A DNA stretch of 62,746 bases, filler included, from Choristocarpus tenellus KU-1152 (GCA_964200185.2; 7 parts of 7 records of this genome joined end to end with filler, not necessarily neighbours in it); one strand, 5' to 3'. Shown: positions 47,222-57,861, counted from the first letter of the whole stretch. Program-made: numbers and translations. The notes: generated by a model from the letters alone, not told the origin.

Positions 47222-48374
47222 ATCAATTATTGAGAGATGAAGTTGTGCTATAATAGCCCCTCACGTTGACGATGTTATGATGGCAGGAATACCTGATGTT
47301 TTGATTCGGGTTCGCTCCAGGATCAAGGAGCAATTTCCTATAGAAGATTTTGGTGACCCTGAGTACTATATGGGTTGTGAGATTTCGCGTGACAGAATTG
47401 CAAAGACAGTTAGCATTAGTCAGACTAAATACAATAGGAGCAATTGTCAAAGATTTGGTATGGATGGGGCAAAGAAGAGGGTGGTACCTCATGATCTCTC
47501 AAGGAATTTAGACAAGAATGAGGATAATCCAAGTGTTGATGAAAATATCCCCCACAGAGAGGCAGTTGGTAGTTAGATGTTGACAGTCGTCATGACCAGG
47601 CTAGATACTGCAAATACAGTTCGTGAGGTTGCCAAGTACAGTAGTAATCTCAAAGCAATATCTTGGATGTCAAAGGTCCAAAAGATTGTAGCTCTCTCCA
47701 TATACATATAATAATTATATAGCCCTTAGCAGGGTGGCACAGGAGTTGCTTTTATTGCGAAATGTTTTGGAGTTTACTCAGCCACAGTTCCCTAGACGTC
47801 GCATTGACATATTTGAGGATAACGATGGTGCATGCAAACTAATACGAAATATCACAAGATCTACTAGAACAAACTACATTGATGTCCGGCACCGTTTTCT
47901 GAGGGACCTAGCTAGGAAAACGAGATATTCGTGTTGTTTTTGTTTGTATTGCAAACCAGAGGGCAGATGAGTTGACCAAGAATTTGCCAGTAAGAATTTT
48001 TAGACAACATGTAAAGTTTTTGATGAGCACGTAATGGGACAACTGGGGTGTAATATATATATATATATTATTGTTAGCGAGTTAGTGCTTGTTTTCAGTA
48101 AGGGGGGAGGATGTCGAATAGTGTTATACTTACGTTGTGTGTGCTGATACAGGCATATAGCACTGTTTCAAGTACGTTTATCTTTAGGTCGTTACAGTAC
48201 AAAGTATTAATGTACGTAACGGCAAGATGAGTCAGTCTTTGGTCATACGTCAGTGATAATGGACGACTAACACAGAAGGTTTGCGGATAATGAATAAAGC
48301 AGTGTATGTTCACCATGTAACTCACCAGCAACTTCTGGCGATGAGCCTTCTTTCCTACGCAAAGCTATTCAATA
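47222..48374 (+). mobile_element. Ty1/Copia relic: RT C-terminus, RNase H, PPT and 3' LTR
   Basis: FPIEDFGDPEYYMGCEISRDR..ISQTKY, PHREAVGS, IFEDNDGAC..RTNYIDVRHRFLRD; polypurine tract AAGGGGGGAGGA at 48100-48111; LTR 48112-48374 (TGTCGAATAG...CTATTCAATA). Confidence 0.88.
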
Positions 48375-49211
48375 TGGGCCTCCACACAACTCCTGGAACA
48401 GGCACGCCAGATCCCTCCCATAAAGTTTAGACTCACTGCCAGCAGATCCGTAGGGAGGGAGGAGACCCTATCCAACAGGTGCTCAGTGGCTGGGTGCAGG
48501 AGGGATAATGTTGACATCCGACATGCTCGTCGTACCTGTGTTAGGGCAGGGGGACAGGTACACCAACATACACTGATGGTGAAGCGTCTAGGTCAACTCT
48601 GCAAAGGAATATGGGTATCCCTTGCACTATGGAGGGCGGTAGCCTATTCACAGTGGACTGGAATTTCAGCTTGGATGTGGTCTTCCATACTGGGGCACTT
48701 GCGGATGCCGGATCAGCTCCCAATCAGGACAAAGGCCTCTTCCTGGATGTTACGTTTGCAGAAGTACAAGCGGCCTCCCATCTGCCCCACTCATCCACCA
48801 GCAATGGTGTAGCTGCTGCTACAGCTGAGGCACGAAGCGTACCCACTACGAGTAGTTTTAACCTCAACACCTTTGTGGTAGAAAGTTTTGTACGCATATG
48901 CAAGCAAACAGAAAGTTTTCTGGACGAGTTGGCTATGCACGCGGTACGGGGAAGATCGGTGGGGGGTTTACAGCAGGAAAGGACCCGTCAAATTACGTTT
49001 ACGACAAATAGTATCTGTCACAACACAAGTGGCTCTCCATCAAGACTTGTCATGCGTTTTAAGCTGGAGATACCAGGGAGATGGGCAAGGAGGGGCCTAT
49101 CAGACTCTTGGGATGCTTCCCTTGCTCCTCGCGCTATGGTGTAGGGCTAAGCTAGGTTTAAGGAATAGGAGGGGAGTGGTGTAGTATACCTCGCAGTCAA
49201 ATAGTAAATAG
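48375..49211 (+). mobile_element. 3' fragment of an RLE-endonuclease (CRE-like) non-LTR retrotransposon
   Basis: CCHC-like C..GC..........HARRTC, then LDVV, FLDVTFAE, AAATAEAR, TFVVESF, RLRQIVSVTTQVA; ends at AATAGTAAATAG. Confidence 0.7.
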
Positions 49212-50996
49212 ATTTGGAGAGATACCTTTCAGATTTACAACTGTTACTTTTAGAAGGATCCTTACAATATTGAATTGACTTTTTTCCTTACACATCTCGA
49301 AAATGTGAGGGCCCATAATAAAATATATTATTGAAAGAGGTGAAGGGGGAAATAACTTACAAACGAATATATATATATATATTGTGTGTAATAGGTAGTT
49401 ATGATGAAGGGTGCGAAGTTAAATCTAACATCTAACTGATTTCGTATCATTTTTCATATATTCTAATTTCAGTAGTAATTGGTGTATGAGAAGACCTCTT
49501 GTTCTGTTGATGAGAAGATCTGGAAAAAAAAGCAAAGAAAAGTATCTATTTGCACTAATAACATATAAATGTCTCTGTTCCCCAGCCTTCAATACCTTCT
49601 ATGTTATAAAAAGTATTTAATAATACAAATTTGTTTTTAGAGAAAATACTAAGATACATATTGATCACCTGTACAACATATACAAAAGTTTAGTCGATAT
49701 AAGAATAATAAAATCCTACAACATTAACTTGTATTATTAGTTATGTTTAATTTGTAATTTTTTTTTGAGATTGTATGAACGTGAGTGGGAGAATAAATAA
49801 CAGTTTAAGATTTCTATGGTAATATAGAGTTAACATAAATTAATTTGAAGAACATGTGTGTAAATGCTTCATGTTAGATGTTAAAAGAGGTGGATGCAAG
49901 TATGGATGTTGTGTGTATGCGTGGTGTGTACCACCACTGTGACATCTGTAGGTAGATTAGTCATCACTATTGCCTTGTTGTTTAATTTAGAAACAGTAGT
50001 TTTGAATATACTACTTTCCAGACCAGTGGCGATTTGGTGAGGTTTGAATCATAGTGTGTTGAATGTTGCGACACAATGATACCACTTTATTTGGTGAGCC
50101 ATCTCCAATTTCCAAGTATTTGAGAATGATGAGTCGATTTATATCAGCAACCACATCTGCATCATCCGTTTATGATTTATTGTCCATGAGTTTAAAACTG
50201 CTCTTTTTGGAGAGGAGTGGGGAGATTTGGATCCCCAGTGGAGATGGAGTAGGATTCCGTATTGAGTCAAGGATTTCAAGTTGTCATTCTGACCTCTTTG
50301 TCTTTATTGAGGTTCATCTCATTGATTGAAAGATGAAAAGGGTAAACAAAGAGGCTGAAATTTTGTAATTGGTTGAAAATACTGCATCACATCAAATCTT
50401 CTGTGTGTTTATTGATCTTTTCATCTTTCTTGTTGGAGATATGACGGTTGAAGAATGAAAACATTCTCCACCCCTTACTCCTGTTTTGTAACTACCCCTT
50501 TCTTCTCAGTCGGTCGAATAATTGACTCAATTCTCTGGACTCTTCGTTTTTGAAAAAGTGGTCAAGAATAAAATGATTTAGTTCCTCTCTAATGGTACTA
50601 AGGTTTAGTCAATCATCGAGTACAGACTCCAAGAGGTTACTACACGAGGAGTCTCGTTCCTCACTCCCCCTCTCTACTATCTCTCCTACACATTTGAATA
50701 ATACGAAGATTGCTTTGTTGGATCATATTTATCTCAGTGGTGATCCTCAATTGTTTGATCTAGCCTTCACCGCCTTCTCGTGGTGTGGAGAGGGCGACGA
50801 AGGTCTGAGTCTGACTAGGCGCCAATAGGACGCGGTATAGAATTCTGCTTGCATGGCCTCGTGGGAGTTATTTGTTCTGTGAGGATATAGACCACTTCAG
50901 GAAGACGGTGTCTTCTAGCTCTTGGGTGGCATCGCACCTTTGACGAGGGGCCTGTGAAGCTCCATCTTTGTGTTGGTATTGCAGGTAGGGTTGACG

Positions 50997-53900
50997 ATGC
51001 TGGACACAGAGGGAAGACCCTTAGCTTTGCAAGATCAAGATCGACAGGGGTCATTAGTGCAAGCTCGAAGCAGTGTCGAACGTCACGTCAATATCAACGG
51101 AACCTCGTTCAAGGCAAGTAGTGTGAGTTGGTGTCCGTTAATTCGATGTCATGCGTTGTATCTCCACCATGTCGAATCCACTGGAGTGGACTATTGTCGG
51201 GTCGTCTGCTTCTTGTAAACCGTATAGTCGGCATAGAAATGCCACAATTAATAGGTATATCAGCCCTCGTTCTGGCGTGTTTGATCGGTTTTCGCGTCTC
51301 TCTAATACCTTGGTGTACATCTAAACATGAACACTGACCTCCTACAGATCCCTGAGCGCTATGGACAGTTGAGAGCGGTGGGGAAGGGGTCGTATGGCGT
51401 GGTATGTTCAGCTGTAGACCAGCAGTTGGACGAGAATGTGGCCATCAAGAAGATTACTCCCATGGCGGCGCACAGGTAAAGAGTGTTCCAGGAGGTCCCA
51501 AAATCCACACTGGGGCCTGCCACAACGAGGATGATTCTCATGATTCATCAGGTGCTCACTCCTCATTGTAGCGCATGATTTTGCACGCAGTGTAGGGTCG
51601 TTTTGCGCTTAGTCCTCCTCTGGCCCGTACGTACGCTCGCATTCTTTGCTCTGTCGCAGGATCGATGCCAAACATGTGTTGAGAGAAGTGAGGGTGATGC
51701 GTCATCTAGGGGTACACGAAAACATCATCACTCTTAAAGACCTCTTCTGTCGGGAGGTGGGTTATAGCTGTGATGGTGCAGGTGCATCAAGTGCTCTCGG
51801 GAAGCATGCCATAGCGGATAGCTCCCCCCTTCCTAGGCTGTTCCTATGTGATATGCTATTCAGCAGGAGTTAGTTCTTTGCTTTGAAATCATTATGAAAT
51901 GTGGATATCAACACTCTCAATTCAACTCAGGGCATACTCTTCGCACTTCTGTTGCAGCACCTCTAGTTTTGGATTGTTGTACATCCATAGATACTAATAT
52001 TGGATCCTGTGATCCTCAAACTGCCAGGTGGATGATGAGCTTTATATTGTGATGGAGCTGCTGGAATCGGATTTGCACCGCGTTATTCACTCCTCCCAGG
52101 TGCTAACTGATCAGCACCATTGTGTGTTCATGCTGCAACTGCTGAGAGGGGTGCAGTTCCTACATGAAAACAACATTATCCACAGAGATCTTAAGCCTGG
52201 TACGTCTATGTGCTAAAAATTCACAATTCCATTACCTCAACCCTAATCTACCCAATCAGCCCCATTTCTCATGCAGCCGTACTATGTAAATGCATGATTG
52301 AGTGCTTGAAATTTGATCATTTAGTGATGAAATGCAGTCTGTGAAAGTAAGACTGGTTAAACCAAATCTCGCCAACAGTACACACCTACACTTATCTTGC
52401 AAATGCGTCCACACACTTACGCCTGCCACTTGTTACACACCCACTCCCTTTCATAACCCCTTCCTATCGTTATGGTGACAGGAAATCTTTTGGTGACACG
52501 ACATTGTGAACTGAGGATATCAGACTTTGGGCTAGCCCGGGCTGTGCCTGGGAAGAATGATGCCAGTTGCCAGGAGGAAGACAGTGGGGAAGCAATGACT
52601 GAGGTTTGCCTACCTAAGATTTGTGCAACTGGAAGCGAATGACATTTGGATTTATGTGTATGATTGCTGTATAGAGAAACTTTGAAAAATCACAACCTTG
52701 TAGCTATTGAATTGCTTTCAATTGAATTTTGATCAAGCTACTGATATAGATAGTGCTTACTCTACAGGAAATGAGTGCTTGGTTTTGGGTGTTGGATAGG
52801 TGTGTATGTAGGGCCCTGACTTGGTGCTGCTATATTTCCTGCTAATTTGCAATTTACACATTGCATGCCTTGTGCTCTTTTTCCTGTTAACTTATTTTTC
52901 TGAATTGAAGTATCTGTTGATAGCTAGGGTAGGGAATTTCTTCTTGTTGAGTTCAATGTGGGTTTAAGGCTTCATGGAGATCATTGACTTTTTTTTTTCT
53001 GTCCCACTCTACTCCCATTTTCTATTCACATTTAGACCCTAACACTTTTTCCTGTTCCTCCCCTCCACGCCCCCCACTAATTCCCAGCATGTTGTCACCC
53101 GATGGTATCGCCCCCCTGAACTGATGCTCTCACCTAATGGCTTTTACGACTTTAGTGTGGACATCTGGTCAGTGGGGTGCATATTTGCAGAGCTCATTGG
53201 GAGGCGACCGTTATTCCCTGGTGAGGAAAAAAGAAGGCATATCGTTTTGTTCCCACCTTTTTGTGATAGTGTACGATATTTTATATCGTATACTGATTAA
53301 GCTGTTTGGTTATGATCATGTAAGATATGTCAGAAATATCACCGATATTGATGATAAAATTATGATCAGAGCTATTGAAGAAGAAATTTCTATTTTTGAG
53401 CTAACAAAAAAAACTAACTATTTTCATGATGATATGGATTATTTAGGTTGGTGTTCTGATCCTCTTGTCTTAAACTTCCTTTCCCCCTGCTCCCACCCTC
53501 TCTGTTTTATCTGGTACTGTGGAGTACAAACCTTTGTTGGAAATTTTATCTTCTGTTTGAATGGTCCCCAACCAATTCTATAGGTCACGACCTGTGCACC
53601 TTCACCTCTGTCTTTCCTTCTTTCATGAGTAAATATTCAAACTGGCCACACCCACTTCCTTGTCACCACTGTCCCACCCCCTTTCCTCCTGTCCCACCCT
53701 CCCAAATCCCATGCTTGCTTGCCTTTATCTTGGCAGGAGGGGACTTTGTGCACCAGCTAGCTCTCATCTTTGATGTGGTTGGTGCACCCCTCCCAGATGA
53801 AGTGTCTCACATCCGTGGCTCCCAGGCTCGCAAGTTCTTGGCAAAATTGAATAGCAAACCTGGGAGGGACATGGCTGAGGTCCTACCTACCGCCACAAGA

Positions 53901-56900
53901 GAGGCAGTGTCACTGCTGCAGAAAATGCTATGTTTTGACCCTCAAAAAAGGCTTAGACCTGAGGAGGGACTGTTGCACAAGTACTTTGAGTCCATCTGGT
54001 GAGGGGTAGGCAGAATGAGTGAATTGACCGTTGTACAATATCTTGATCCTCAATCTTTCCATACTCAAAATCACTGCTCAAATTCACTATGTGTGAAATT
54101 GCCAATAGTTCATTTTTTACCTCTAATGTAGCCTAACAATATCCATGGTTCACTCCTCTGCCCACCTGTTTCCTTTGACCACAATCTATGATTATAGTGA
54201 TGAACCCCAGTTGAGTGTTGAGCCACCGAATGAGCTAAATTTCGACTTCGAGAGGGGACTATCCAGGGAGGAGCTCCGTGAACTCATTTTGGAGGAGATA
54301 TGCCAGTTTCCCTCGGGAGAGTATCTCAGATCTTGTCAAGGAATGATCTCCCAGGAGGAGAACTCATCCCCTTCTCAGGTGGATGAGACCCCCGAGGACC
54401 AAGATAACCTCTTATTGATCAAGAAGAACACACAGGTGATAGAAGGGGAGCCAATATCATTGCAACCTCAAGCATCAAGTCGTCCACCAGGCCCATGTAG
54501 ATCTCCTGCAGAGTACGGTGCTGAGGTTATTGCTGTGTCCACTTCTCGTGCCGAAACCACCACTACTCAGGCCACTGACACATCCACTTGTGAGAATGAG
54601 GTCCCAGGTGGGGTAGCAGCCACAGTGACTGAATTAAGTCAACCAAATGGGAGAAAAGTGGCGTGCCAGAATGTCGAAGATCATGGGGTTGCTGCACAAT
54701 CTGCTAATTTGGGGTGGGATGCCATTGGGAACAGGCGAATCTGTGAGCATGGTGGTTGTGGGGATGGAGGCGGTGTCACCCTTCCTATCAAGCAGACCGA
54801 TCATCAAGGCAATGTGAATCAAAATGATTTGTCTAAGAGGAGTTCTGAGCAACGGAGTCTTAAGGTGCTCCCTGCATCCCCGCTACTTAATTTTGTGATG
54901 GATGCAGACTGCATAAGGAGCAAGGGGGCTTTTAATGATGCCATCAGTCCCAGCATAGGGATATGCCGGAATGCGAAGCGGGGACAAAGGAAAGGTCTAT
55001 CGGGTCGCTCTGTTCCAGGCAGGTTCTGGGCCTCTGATGATGAAGAGGTGGGTGTCTGCGCATCAAAGTATTTTAGTGAGACTTCCAAGGACAAGAACAA
55101 CAAAGAAACAGGAATAGCACATGACGGAGGACATGGGCAGGCAGGTGGAGGTACAGATGAGGGTGGGGGTGGAGTGGATGTTGGGATGGAGGTTGAGAAG
55201 GAGCAATTGGATGGGTCATGTCTGGGTGGCCTGTCTCGGGGGAAGGAGGGGCAGGTGGCCAGAGTCGTGGATACTTGGTCTGAGGTTCCTAGAGCTTCTC
55301 CCATGGCTACATTAGAAAGAAAATTAGGACATAGTAGTGCTCTTGGGGTCAAGGATTTCCCTCTCAAGGCTCTGGGAGAGAAGGTAAAATCCCTTAGAGT
55401 GGCCACTGTTGCACCATCTCCCATGACTGGGCACACAAGCAGACCGGGTGATATTCAGGAACTGGGGGAGAATAAGGATCTGGCAACTGTGCCGAGTAGA
55501 TTCCTTTCAGCCAAGGCCCAGTCAAGTCTCCAGATCTGTCCCAGACCTTGCAGAATTGTTGCTGATAATGGATTGCGAAATTGTTTAGATGCCAGAAGTC
55601 ATGGGTCCCTGCTCCAAGCTAGAGATGCCAGGCCGGTGGGCAGGACAGGTCTTGATCCTTCATGTTCAGCACATGGACTAGAGAAAGTGTTACCCTTGCA
55701 GGTAGTGCAGCCGCCACAGGTTCCTTTGCAGTCAGCCAATGTCACAAAGGGTTGCTTCCCTGGTAGGATCCAGGCCTCCTCGCCGACCTCAGGAGCTCTG
55801 CTGTCAGGAGCTTCGTCTAGATGCAGTCCCCCGCCTTTGCTTCCCCTGAGGCGAGTGTCCTGGAGCAGAGAGCGGAAAGGTCGGGGCAGATCAAGTAAGA
55901 TTTGGTCATCACCATCGGTAGAGCGAGGGGTGGTGAGGAGGAAGAGCAAGCTGGTAGGAAAAGTATCAAGGCAAGGATTCACAGAAGGGGTTGAGGTCGT
56001 GTTTGGTGAGACTGGAAGAGATGTGTCAAGGAGGAGCAGGAGTTCAAAGGATCGCCCACAAGAGAGGGTCAGTGGCGAAGACTTTCCTGAGCCTACAATA
56101 TGTCAAAACCAAAAATCATGGGTGTGGAAGGAACCTGTGAAGACGACAGCAAAGAAAGTAACAGCACCAGTAGAAGCAGAGAAAACAGTGGCCACTGTGA
56201 ATTGGACTTGGGACAAGGTTGACTCACTGAGACGTAGAGCAGCTGCTGCTGGGACTGATGAGGGGATGAAGACAGAGGAGTTGGGGGAAGGAGGGAGTGG
56301 CCAAGCACTGAGTGAGGGGCGGAAGGCGATGACAAACCCTTGCCAGACTCAGGCTAAGGGCGTGCACCAGTCAGGATTAACGAGAGGGGACTTGCTCCAG
56401 GCAGAGCAATTCAGGGCAATACATCAACTGGATACCACTAAACGCAAGGTGGGTCACAGGCATAGCCTCTAATATATATATATATATATTTTGTTGCGCT
56501 GGGACAACTACAAGGCAGGTAGGGGAATCTAAAAGGGATTCCATGATATGGGAAGTCTTAATGGTAAGCTAAGGACTGTACCTTAGGAAAGAAATATGGT
56601 GAAACAGTTACCAAACGGTGGGTGCACTTGAAAAGATCAAACGAAACCAAACAGCTCAACTGAGCCAAGAAACTTGATTGTTTGAATTTACTTTCCATAT
56701 TCATTGTTCCCCACTAGCTTTGCTACAATCTAGTGTGCTACTGATGGGAGATGTAATGGGGCAGGCAGTTTTGCTGTGTTGGTCCATTTTTCAACCAGAT
56801 TGCTCCTTTCCTTCCTAATTTTTATGTCAACTGTAATCGTTTTTCAATATTTGCTGCTATTAGGATGGGCCCTAATATTAATAGCCAGGGAATTGTTTCC

Positions 56901-57861
56901 CAGGTATGATCTTCATTTGATTAACATAGGCTGCGTTGGTGTTTTTGAGGGAGCTTCAAGGGTAGCACTAGGGTCAACGTATCTGGGGGGGGGGTGCCGG
57001 CGTCCTTTTTTCACCCTTTTTTCGATTTTCGATTTTCGCTTTTTTGGTGTAATTTGGTCGCACGCGTCAGATTTGAAATGTTAGCAAAAAAAACGTGGTT
57101 TGACCGAAACAGACACCCCCTCACAAACCACCCCCCCCCCAAGATACTTTGACCCACTATTAATACGAGTATATTCAACAGCAACTGCCTGTCTTGCTGT
57201 ACAAGCCACTGAGCACACAAAAACAATGAGCTATCACCTAAGCTGACTACCCGTCACTCACACTATCCCTCTGCCTCCGCACTGAAATGTTTTGAAGGCA
57301 ATGAATAAGAGGACTCCACTGGGTCACCAGTACAGTGGCTGCAGCAGTGGCAGTGAGTATTCTATCTTGAGCAGGGAAAGGCTTCCGCCTATCTTGTCAC
57401 CAACATATGAATCTCAAAAGTGGCAAGGGAGTAATGATAGCACTGCTGTTGGTTTGAGGAGGCTGAATCTGCAGACATCTTTGATGGATGACGGTCCCAA
57501 ATCACGGGCTTCTACAGCTAGCACCTTTTCTGTACTCCACAGTGCCAGAGAGCATGGTTCTGGAGGAAAGGGTATCAAATGCGAGGAAGACACAGTAACT
57601 CCCCTGGTTGGTGCCTTCCGCACCTCAAAGACAAAGGCTTTTACCACAATTTTTTCATCCAATGCTGTTGTTGCTTCCACAACCATGCGACAAAATTTTG
57701 GTGAGAACTACAGCAATGACTGTGGTAGACAGGGTTGCCTGGGTGGGGTTGCTGTCAAGAGTGAAGGAGTCGCAACTAAAACATTGCAGCTTCCAAAGAT
57801 GACTGGCAGAGAAGTTGTTCCGAAGGTTGTCCCATGGACATGGGGGGAGATGGAGCGGTAA
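50997..57861 (+). CDS. Mitogen-activated protein kinase with TEH activation loop and ~900-aa low-complexity C-terminal extension
   Basis: Exons 50997-51113 (GC donor), 51348-51475, 51660-51756, 52028-52199, 52482-52603, 53088-53220, 53737-53998, 54198-56448, 57298-57861. Motifs [57 protein letters not shown]|[37 protein letters not shown]. Confidence 0.94.
53263..53450 (+). pseudogene. cysS: Fragment of bacterial cysteinyl-tRNA synthetase (Rickettsiales-like) inside MAPK intron 6
   Basis: Translates [62 protein letters not shown], including the CysRS hallmark [14 protein letters not shown]-rich relative to host exons; no start codon, HIGH or KMSKS. Confidence 0.85.
56971..57155. mobile_element. 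MITE family A (variant internal sequence), in last MAPK intron
   Basis: GGGTCAACGTATCTGGGG...AGATACTTTGACCC; 4-bp TSD ACTA/ACTA. Confidence 0.88.

What the first reader, a model, noticed from the sequence alone, without database searches (positions are those of the whole stretch)
53263..53450. Rickettsia-like cysteinyl-tRNA synthetase fragment embedded in a MAPK intron
Seen: within intron 53221-53736, ~190 AT-rich bp form an uninterrupted frame with [29 protein letters not shown]...ISIFELT...FHDDMDYLG, flanked by ordinary host intron sequence and intact kinase exons on the same contig. Established: YVRNITD(I/V)DDKI is a bacterial CysRS signature, and Rickettsiaceae such as Ca. Megaira infect algae. 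Inference: the YDxLYRxxIKxFG and YLG context looks Rickettsiaceae-like to me, so this may be a fairly recent endosymbiont-to-nucleus DNA transfer recording an infection of this host.
Basis: partly seen in the sequence, partly recalled or inferred. Interest (0 to 1): 0.8.

Follow-up and report, generated by a model that had tools for sequence, protein, structure and literature searches.

The report
Rickettsiaceae gene scrap in brown-alga intron
A 188-base piece of the cysteinyl-tRNA synthetase gene of a Megaira-type intracellular bacterium (family Rickettsiaceae) sits, inert, inside an intron of a MAP-kinase gene of the brown alga Choristocarpus tenellus, a small DNA fossil showing that this early-branching brown alga lineage has been in intimate contact with such bacteria.

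Summary
Window 53263-53450 (+) is a 188-nt stretch of 27% G+C. It reads without a stop as residues about 45-107 of a bacterial CysRS (Pfam PF01406, E 4.5e-12).

- **Host:** the brown alga Choristocarpus tenellus. The piece is an 11,810-nt contig carrying an annotated 1281-aa MAPK.
- **Position:** the stretch lies in the GT..AG intron 53220-53735. An RNA-type contig splices this intron out cleanly.
- **Support from reads:** independent per-run contigs of three samples from one study reproduce the insert in its host context.
- **Donor:** a Rickettsiaceae bacterium, not genus Rickettsia. The insert is 95.6% identical in DNA (174/182, plus one 3-nt gap) to cysS on bacterial contigs from other runs, and about 90% in protein. 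In a CysRS tree it groups with these at SH-aLRT 100. That clade also holds the symbiont contig of the Ectocarpus sp. 12 assembly, which a preprint assigns to the Megaira group (Ca. Penulousia).
- **Empty site:** the Ectocarpus siliculosus orthologue has the same intron position without the insert.
- **Function:** none. It has no HIGH or KMSKS motif and no start codon, and it is absent from the spliced mRNA contig.

It is a dead bacterium-to-nucleus DNA insertion of the kind known from Volvox and from Wolbachia hosts. I rate it a new member of a known kind, of moderate interest. Its age is unresolved, with at most about 2% insert-specific change.

The parts
53263..53450 (+). Inserted fragment of a Rickettsiaceae cysS gene. 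It corresponds to donor codons about 45-107 (nt 133/139-323 of a 1383-nt gene). It is 188 nt at 27% G+C, with an open frame but no start codon, no HIGH motif and no KMSKS motif.
   Evidence: Pfam and NCBIfam hits. 95.6% DNA identity to cysS of L093, L094 and L097. About 90% protein identity to P0152, P0287 and P0291. Tree placement.
53220..53735 (+). Spliceosomal GT..AG intron of the host MAPK gene that holds the insert. It is 516 nt, or 328 nt without the insert.
   Evidence: A spliced contig of run X3 joins 53219 to 53736 at depth 163, while the intron including the insert is covered at depth 3.2-3.4. The annotated protein P0269 maps to both flanking exons. The same intron position occurs in Ectocarpus, about 191 nt long and without the insert.
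53086..53219 (+). Upstream MAPK exon (P0269 residues about 212-257).
53736..53997 (+). Downstream MAPK exon (P0269 residues about 257-343).
50997..57858 (+). Span of the host gene: a 1281-aa MAPK with a long C-terminal extension, annotated as 'unnamed protein product [Choristocarpus tenellus]' (P0269).
   Evidence: tblastn map. PDB MAPK hits.
53255..53270 (.). Left junction, between 53262 and 53263. The host intron ends in ...CCACCTTTTT and the donor-like sequence starts at GTGATAGTG (donor GTAGTTGTA or GTAGTAGTA). There is no target-site duplication or terminal repeat.
   Evidence: Alignments. Repeat scan. The X2 contig 53093-53455 bridges the junction.
53443..53458 (.). Right junction, between 53450 and 53451. 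The donor-like ...TTAGGTTG is followed by the host GTGTTCTGATCC, whereas the donor continues CAAGAGGCC.
   Evidence: Alignment. The X1 contig spans the junction and X3 contig 53422-53676 crosses it. In X2 two contigs meet here.

Best explanation
This is a non-functional piece of bacterial DNA fixed in the nuclear genome of the brown alga Choristocarpus tenellus. At some time a Megaira-group Rickettsiaceae bacterium, an obligate intracellular lineage, was inside or in intimate contact with cells of this algal lineage.

A 188-nt fragment of its cysS gene entered the nucleus. It was ligated into a chromosome break within an intron of a MAPK gene. The likely route is end-joining repair, as for NUMT/NUPT and Wolbachia-derived inserts; this step is inferred, not shown.

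The fragment lies in an intron and brings no competing splice site that is used, so it is removed with the intron and the kinase mRNA is unaffected. It encodes no enzyme. It covers only about 63 of 460 codons, without the HIGH or KMSKS motifs or a start codon.

Its open frame and bacterial composition are leftovers from a coding origin with little decay since. They are not signs of function.
For: **What the fragment is**
- CysRS catalytic-domain fragment.
- 0 stops in the native frame against 3-10 in the other frames.

**Donor**
- All named close homologues are Rickettsiaceae.
- Protein identity is 90.5% to P0152, P0287 and P0291.
- DNA identity is 95.6% (174/182, plus one 3-nt gap) to cysS on contigs L093, L094 and L097. 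These have bacterial gene order (HisKA-cysS-CSD-Elm1), shared with a 1.48-Mb genome.
- The tree puts win_frag with P0152 and P0287 at SH-aLRT 100, inside a 23-row clade (98) that is separate from Rickettsia, Tisiphia and Trichorickettsia. This clade includes P0273, from Ectocarpus sp. 12 assembly contig CAXNAL020041499.1. Preprint 10.64898/2026.03.27.714854 attributes that assembly's bacterial sequences to Ca. Penulousia (Megaira group).

**Host and position**
- P0269 is from Choristocarpus tenellus.
- The exon map is and the MAPK identity.

**Integration is real**
- An X1 contig of 7925 nt covers 52300-54500 with 0 differences.
- An X2 contig, 53093-53455, bridges the left junction.
- In RNA-type run X3, low-depth contigs 53244-53421 and 53422-53676 carry the insert in intron context, while the mature transcript contig skips 53220-53735.
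- Nothing else in the piece matches the Rickettsiaceae loci, and the similarity ends sharply at both junctions.

**Empty orthologous intron**
- The Ectocarpus siliculosus orthologue has the intron at the same position, about 191 nt long, with no CysRS hit.
Against: - All three runs belong to one study and probably one strain. X1 may be the data the assembly was made from.
- Only contigs could be laid, not raw reads, so equal depth across the junctions is not shown.
- In X2 two contigs meet exactly at the right junction (53447-53455). This could be low coverage or a branch, for example an allele without the insert.
- X3's two intron contigs reach only 19 nt (left junction) and 29 nt (right junction) onto one side of the junction. 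Both are under the tool's 31-nt bridging rule.
- No named Ca. Megaira reference genome was available for the tree, so the Megaira-group label rests on one literature link.
- The insertion mechanism is inferred. No microhomology of note and no duplication was seen.
Confidence: 0.85

Rival explanations
1. Assembly or library artefact: bacterial contaminant reads were chimerically joined into the host contig, so the insert does not exist in the alga's chromosomes.
For: The Phaeoexplorer methods describe cultures with bacterial contaminants that had to be filtered out. X2 contigs break at the right junction. All supporting runs come from one study.
Against: - An artefact would have to place exactly 188 nt between two halves of one intron, with seamless host sequence on both sides.
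- It would also have to recur in three separately assembled runs, one of them RNA-type.
- No bacterial sequence continues beyond either junction.
- The insert carries its own substitutions and a 3-nt deletion relative to all sampled bacteria.
Confidence: 0.04
2. The insert is real and Rickettsiaceae-derived, but the donor was not a symbiont of Choristocarpus. It lived in an associated protist or epiphyte, or reached the alga through another vector such as a virus, so the insert does not record an infection of this host.
For: No symbiont contig from C. tenellus itself was seen. The closest bacterial contigs come from runs of unknown origin: SRR30765337, SRR30765334 and SRR33375174. Their sample identities could not be found.
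Against: - By established knowledge, Rickettsiaceae are obligately intracellular, so their DNA is most likely to reach a nucleus from inside the same cell.
- Megaira-group bacteria have been recovered from sequence data of two other brown algae, Nemacystus decipiens and Ectocarpus sp. 12.
- Viral-contig hits are much weaker, at 41-59% and partial.
Confidence: 0.1
3. The fragment is a pseudo-exon or decayed copy of the host's own nuclear gene for organellar (bacterial-type) CysRS, or comes from an integrated giant virus.
For: Eukaryotes carry bacterial-type organellar CysRS, and by own knowledge some giant viruses encode CysRS. Brown algal genomes hold many viral insertions, as discussed in the Phaeoexplorer preprint seen.
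Against: - The insert is 95.6% identical in DNA to genes on contigs with bacterial neighbours.
- Its G+C of 27% is unlike host exons, at about 50%.
- It nests deep inside Rickettsiaceae.
- The best viral-contig matches are 41-59% and partial.
Confidence: 0.01

Closest known systems
Rickettsial DNA in the nuclear genome of Volvox carteri (Kawafune et al. 2015, PMC4324946)
   Same: DNA of a Rickettsiaceae endosymbiont lineage of algae is integrated in an algal nuclear genome. It is detectable in a strain in which no symbiont was found, and it is read as a trace of a past infection.
   Different: The Volvox case is about 9 kb with four gene-like regions in a green alga. Here the insert is 188 nt of one gene, inside an intron, in a brown alga (a stramenopile). 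The donor is closest to a different branch, near the Ectocarpus sp. 12-associated bacterium.
Wolbachia-to-host nuclear transfers in insects and nematodes (own knowledge: Dunning Hotopp et al. 2007 and later work)
   Same: Fragments of an obligate intracellular Rickettsiales bacterium, from under 500 bp to whole genomes, are inserted into host chromosomes. They are mostly non-functional and decaying.
   Different: The bacterial family differs (Anaplasmataceae/Wolbachia against Rickettsiaceae). The host kingdom differs too. No transcription of the insert is seen here other than as part of the pre-mRNA.
NUMT/NUPT insertions (organelle DNA in nuclear introns; own knowledge)
   Same: Short AT-rich foreign fragments are captured at chromosome breaks, often without target duplication. 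They are tolerated in introns and removed by splicing.
   Different: The source here is a free-standing bacterial genome, not an organelle. cysS is not organelle-encoded.
Megaira-group symbionts detected in brown-alga sequence data: Nemacystus decipiens (Davison et al. 2023, PMC10132079) and Ectocarpus sp. 12 AP-2014 (preprint 10.64898/2026.03.27.714854)
   Same: The bacterial family is the same, and by the tree so is the broad clade. The host class is also the same.
   Different: Those cases are bacterial contigs or MAGs alongside the host assembly. L100 is colinear with a bacterial contig over its whole length. The present case is bacterial DNA inside a host gene. The insert is only 79.5% identical in DNA to the Ectocarpus sp. 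12 contig.

Membership tests
Cysteinyl-tRNA synthetase, class I (Pfam PF01406 / TIGR00435) | Sequence matches the catalytic-domain profile | tested here: met
   PF01406 E 4.5e-12, profile positions 31-90 of 301. TIGR00435 E 6e-12, far below the full-length cutoff because only 63 residues are present.
Cysteinyl-tRNA synthetase, class I (Pfam PF01406 / TIGR00435) | HIGH signature motif of class I synthetases | tested here: not met
   In the donors HPHIGNARS lies just upstream of VVVYD. The window has host intron sequence there.
Cysteinyl-tRNA synthetase, class I (Pfam PF01406 / TIGR00435) | KMSKS motif, anticodon-binding domain, and a complete ORF with start and stop | tested here: not met
   The similarity ends at donor residue about 107 of 460. 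There is no start codon of its own. So this is a fragment of a family member's gene, not an enzyme.
Origin in Rickettsiaceae, Megaira group (Ca. Megaira / Ca. Penulousia) | Nearest sequences and tree position lie within Rickettsiaceae, outside genus Rickettsia | tested here: met
   Every named hit among the 120 listed carries a Rickettsiaceae or Rickettsiales name, apart from one MAG labelled only Pseudomonadota. The tree gives SH-aLRT 100 with P0152 and P0287, and 98 for the 23-row clade that is separate from Rickettsia, Tisiphia and Trichorickettsia.
Origin in Rickettsiaceae, Megaira group (Ca. Megaira / Ca. Penulousia) | Clusters with a genome formally assigned to the Megaira group | tested here: inconclusive
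   The only anchor is P0273 / L100, contig CAXNAL020041499.1 of the Ectocarpus sp. 12 assembly. A preprint assigns that assembly's bacterial sequences to Ca. Penulousia. No 16S sequence or named Megaira cysS was in hand.
Bacterium-to-nucleus DNA insertion (LGT fossil, like Wolbachia inserts or the Volvox rickettsial insert) | Both junctions are continuous with host DNA in data independent of the assembly | tested here: met
   Per-run contigs of X1 (whole region), X2 (left junction bridged) and X3 (both junctions crossed, with 19 and 29 nt on the short side) show 0 differences. All come from one study.
Bacterium-to-nucleus DNA insertion (LGT fossil, like Wolbachia inserts or the Volvox rickettsial insert) | The flanks are bona fide nuclear sequence | tested here: met
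   Three GT..AG introns are spliced out in an RNA-type contig. The exons encode a MAPK annotated in C. tenellus.
Bacterium-to-nucleus DNA insertion (LGT fossil, like Wolbachia inserts or the Volvox rickettsial insert) | Read depth over the insert equals that of the host flanks | not testable with these tools
   Only contigs were served, and each carries one depth figure.
Bacterium-to-nucleus DNA insertion (LGT fossil, like Wolbachia inserts or the Volvox rickettsial insert) | The orthologous site is empty in a relative | tested here: met
   The Ectocarpus siliculosus orthologue (L099) has the intron at the same codon, about 191 nt long, with no CysRS match at E<=10. The relative is distant, so this dates the insertion only loosely.
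Functional horizontally acquired gene | Own start codon, complete domain, and presence in mature mRNA | tested here: not met
   The fragment is intronic and is skipped by the depth-163 transcript contig. It covers 63 of 460 codons.

The most novel reading that the evidence does not exclude
The insert is one visible piece of a wider record that nobody has noticed. On this reading, Choristocarpus tenellus, a member of the earliest-branching brown-alga order, carries or recently carried a Megaira-group endosymbiont. Its nuclear genome would hold further fragments of that bacterium. Symbiont fossils in introns could then be used to map past Rickettsiaceae infections across brown algae.
Probability: 0.35. 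Interest if true: 0.6.

Novelty: new member of a known kind. Interest (0 to 1): 0.45.

Why it matters
Rickettsiaceae of the Megaira group are known from brown algae only through bacterial sequences found in two genome projects. A bacterial fragment fixed inside a nuclear intron is harder to dismiss as culture contamination, because the DNA had to be inside the algal cell line. It therefore extends the association to Choristocarpus, at the base of the brown algal tree.

The case also shows that short symbiont-derived inserts escape gene-based HGT screens. The Phaeoexplorer preprint does not mention Rickettsia. Such inserts can still be found by frame and composition.

The fragment itself has no function.

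Tried and rejected
**Searches that missed or found nothing**
- The GTDB scan with the 63-aa fragment gave at best 62%, to a 'Rickettsia sp.' MAG. The whole-library HMMER search was needed to reach them.
- Viral contigs gave only weak partial matches, so a giant-virus origin is rejected.
- Exact look-ups of the window's own ORFs (775 aa and 148 aa) found nothing. The run accessions of the host data therefore stay coded.
- A paper search for the run and assembly accessions behind the closest bacterial contigs gave 0 hits.
- Two exact-pattern scans of JGI metagenomes for the insert's sequence gave 0 hits.

**Checks around the insert**
- The repeat scan found no target-site duplication, terminal repeats or transposon features.
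- tblastx and blastn of the whole piece against ten Rickettsiales loci found no second fragment. That reference covers only the cysS neighbourhood.
- The AT-rich stretch 49200-49900 has only short ORFs and no such match.

**Left undone**
- DNA of the contig encoding P0001 could not be fetched.
Exons were handled by reference, and the database protein P0269 was used as returned.

Full report
**1. The observation**

It matches the catalytic domain of cysteinyl-tRNA synthetase. Pfam PF01406 scores E 4.5e-12 over profile positions 31-90 of 301, and TIGR00435 cysS scores E 6e-12.

The native frame has no stop, while the other five frames have 3 to 10. Only 0.17% of shuffles of the same letters are open in that frame. 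The stretch has 27.1% G+C, against 40-47% in the rest of the intron and 45% for the piece.

**2. Host and gene**

A word search with the long downstream exon returned one protein, P0269. It is 1281 aa, 99% identical, named 'unnamed protein product [Choristocarpus tenellus]', and sits on a contig of 11,810 nt, which is the length of this piece. Choristocarpus tenellus is a brown alga sequenced in the Phaeoexplorer project (preprint 10.1101/2024.02.19.579948).

P0269 maps to + strand exons from 50997 to 57858. Its first 360 residues match solved MAP kinases at E about 1e-84. The insert lies between the exons 53086-53219 and 53736-53997. I built no joined spliced model; exons were used by reference, and P0269 was used as the database returned it.

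**3. Is it really in the alga's DNA?**

Three public runs of one study, from three samples, hold this stretch. The organism is coded. Their separately built contigs were laid on 52300-54500.

| Run | What its contigs show |
|---|---|
| X1 | One 7925-nt contig covers everything with no difference. It may be the assembly's own data. |
| X2 | A contig 53093-53455 bridges the left junction. The next contig starts at 53447, so two contigs meet at the right junction. |
| X3 | Behaves as RNA (see below). |

In X3 a contig of depth 163 skips 52602-53085, 53220-53735 and 53998-54196, each with GT..AG ends. Low-depth contigs (3.2-3.4) at 53244-53421 and 53422-53676 carry the insert within intron sequence. 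They reach only 19 nt and 29 nt onto one side of the left and right junctions, both under the tool's 31-nt bridging rule.

So the intron is real and the mature mRNA lacks the insert. Contigs from unspliced transcripts or residual DNA in the RNA-type run carry it in its host context. An artefact placing exactly 188 nt between two halves of one intron, in three separate assemblies, is very unlikely.

Two things are not shown. Raw-read depth across the junctions could not be examined, because only contigs were served. Independence from a single strain or study is also unproven.

**4. The donor**

The GTDB pattern scan gave at best 62%, to a 'Rickettsia sp.' MAG, followed by assorted alphaproteobacteria. 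Viral contigs were weaker.

The exhaustive HMMER search found P0001 at 87%. Searching with the CysRS part of P0001 then brought a dense set of 460-aa CysRS proteins. Every named hit carries a Rickettsiaceae or Rickettsiales name, apart from one MAG labelled only Pseudomonadota: Ca. Tisiphia, Ca. Trichorickettsia, Rickettsia spp. and 'Rickettsiaceae bacterium'.

The fragment is 90.5% identical to P0152, P0287 and P0291. P0152 and P0287 lie on contigs from SRR30765337, SRR30765334 and SRR33375174. These contigs have bacterial gene order (PBP, FtsW, HisKA, cysS, cold-shock protein, Elm1-like), the same order around cysS as on a 1.48-Mb contig.

At the DNA level 53269-53450 is 95.6% identical (174 of 182, plus one 3-nt gap) to cysS nt 139-323 of these contigs. 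Identity falls to 89.7%, 84.8% and 83.7% for further relatives, and to 73.9% for the GTDB 'Rickettsia sp.' MAG.

A maximum-likelihood tree of 82 CysRS rows gave the following:
- The fragment groups with P0152 and P0287 at SH-aLRT 100.
- This group sits inside a 23-row clade (98).
- That clade is separate from the Rickettsia, Tisiphia and Trichorickettsia clade.
- The neighbouring subclade contains P0273, 'unnamed protein product [Ectocarpus sp. 12 AP-2014]'.

P0273 lies on contig CAXNAL020041499.1. That contig is colinear over its whole length with the bacterial contig L097. A 2026 preprint states that this very assembly (CAXNAL02) contains sequences of a Ca. Penulousia endosymbiont (Megaira group, Clade B). 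[quoted passage not shown]

The donor is therefore a Rickettsiaceae bacterium, most probably of the Megaira group. The group label rests on that single literature anchor, because no named Megaira cysS or 16S sequence was in hand.

**5. Boundaries and decay**

Similarity to the bacterial gene starts at GTGATAGTG (53263; the donors have GTAGTTGTA or GTAGTAGTA). It ends at TTAGGTTG (53450). After that the donors continue CAAGAGGCC, while the window continues with C/T-rich intron sequence. No duplication, terminal repeat or transposon feature flanks the insert.

Against the closest bacterial gene, 12 nucleotides in 11 codons differ. One of these is the last base of codon 63, which lies at the right junction and is host sequence. 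Seven of the window's states occur in other bacterial relatives, so they are probably donor-lineage variation. Four substitutions are unique to the window, two synonymous and two not. There is also one 3-nt deletion in an ACTACT repeat.

This puts an upper bound of about 2% on change since insertion. It does not date the event, because the true donor strain is unsampled. 'Fairly recent' is compatible with the data but not demonstrated.

**6. Empty site**

The Ectocarpus siliculosus orthologue is P0343, 62% identical in the kinase part and also carrying a long C-terminal extension. It has an intron at the same codon (residue 257), only about 191 nt long, with no CysRS similarity even at E 10.

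The intron position therefore predates the divergence of the two lineages, and the insert was added later in the Choristocarpus line. The comparison is distant, so it only says the insert is not ancestral to brown algae.

**7. Mechanism**

The following are shown:
- a bacterial gene fragment lies inside a nuclear intron;
- the intron is spliced normally;
- the fragment lacks every feature needed for function.

The following are inferred. DNA released from an intracellular bacterium reached the nucleus and was captured during end-joining repair of a break in the intron. It was tolerated there because introns are removed. The open frame is a relic of coding origin.

**8. Comparison with known cases**

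- The closest case is the roughly 9-kb rickettsial insert in the Volvox carteri nuclear genome, read as a trace of a lost symbiont (PMC4324946).
- Wolbachia-derived nuclear inserts and NUMT/NUPT insertions behave alike (own knowledge).
- New here are the host (a brown alga of an early-branching order), the donor branch, and the very small size and intronic position.

The Phaeoexplorer preprint does not mention Rickettsia, and its HGT screen was gene-based. In the searches run here I found no paper reporting Rickettsiaceae DNA in a brown algal nucleus. The library searched is not complete.

**9. Verdict**

The finding is real and correctly interpreted. It is a dead bacterium-to-nucleus DNA fossil, a new member of a known kind. 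Its value is as evidence of contact between Megaira-type bacteria and Choristocarpus, and as a pointer to a genome-wide search.

I put confidence in the main explanation at 0.85. The main residual doubt is whether the donor lived in this alga itself. The lack of raw-read confirmation is a second doubt.

Noticed in passing
P0001 (ENA metagenome assembly ERZ23498364, contig of 1405 nt; no DNA could be fetched): The first ~200 residues are CysRS, 99% identical to P0285 of a bacterial contig. Upstream there is a gene at the spacing expected for the bacterial HisKA neighbour. The ORF then runs on for about 80 residues of unrelated, non-AT-rich-looking sequence. This is either a chimeric metagenome contig or a second junction between Rickettsiaceae DNA and some other genome.
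   Followed up: partly
window 53447-53455 (run X2): In run X2 two contigs meet exactly at the right junction of the insert. X1 runs through, and X3 breaks elsewhere (53421/53422). The cause could be low coverage or a branch, such as an allele without the insert.
   Followed up: no
L090/L091 and L098 (runs SRR14610202 and SRR14610203): Run SRR14610203 holds two clearly different Rickettsiales-type cysS genes. P0002 is 62% identical to P0001 and sits next to rpsD. P0285 lies in the clade of the insert, next to HisKA. The sample therefore contains two different such bacteria.
   Followed up: no
L092 (ENA ERZ18242340, contig of 1099 nt, coverage 1.2): P0006 is a CysRS-like ORF, 64% identical to the fragment. 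It loses CysRS similarity after about 150 residues. It is either a pseudogene or a poor low-coverage contig.
   Followed up: no
window 47277-47573 (+): This ORF has a weak hit to copia-type reverse transcriptase: PF07727 RVT_2, E 7.7e-4, below the curated cutoff. It is probably a decayed Ty1/copia remnant at the 5' end of the contig.
   Followed up: partly
window 49200-49900: A very AT-rich stretch (G+C 0.22-0.34) lies about 1 kb upstream of the first mapped MAPK exon. It has only short ORFs and no match to the Rickettsiales loci in hand. Its nature is unknown; it may be ordinary intergenic or promoter DNA.
   Followed up: partly
window 54199-57858 (P0269 residues ~345-1281): The MAPK carries a C-terminal extension of about 900 residues with no Pfam domain. 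The only significant hit of the extension alone was the protein itself. The brown-alga orthologues are even longer: Ectocarpus 1790 aa and Pylaiella 1740 aa. Many oomycete MAPKs of similar length carry a WW domain instead.
   Followed up: no
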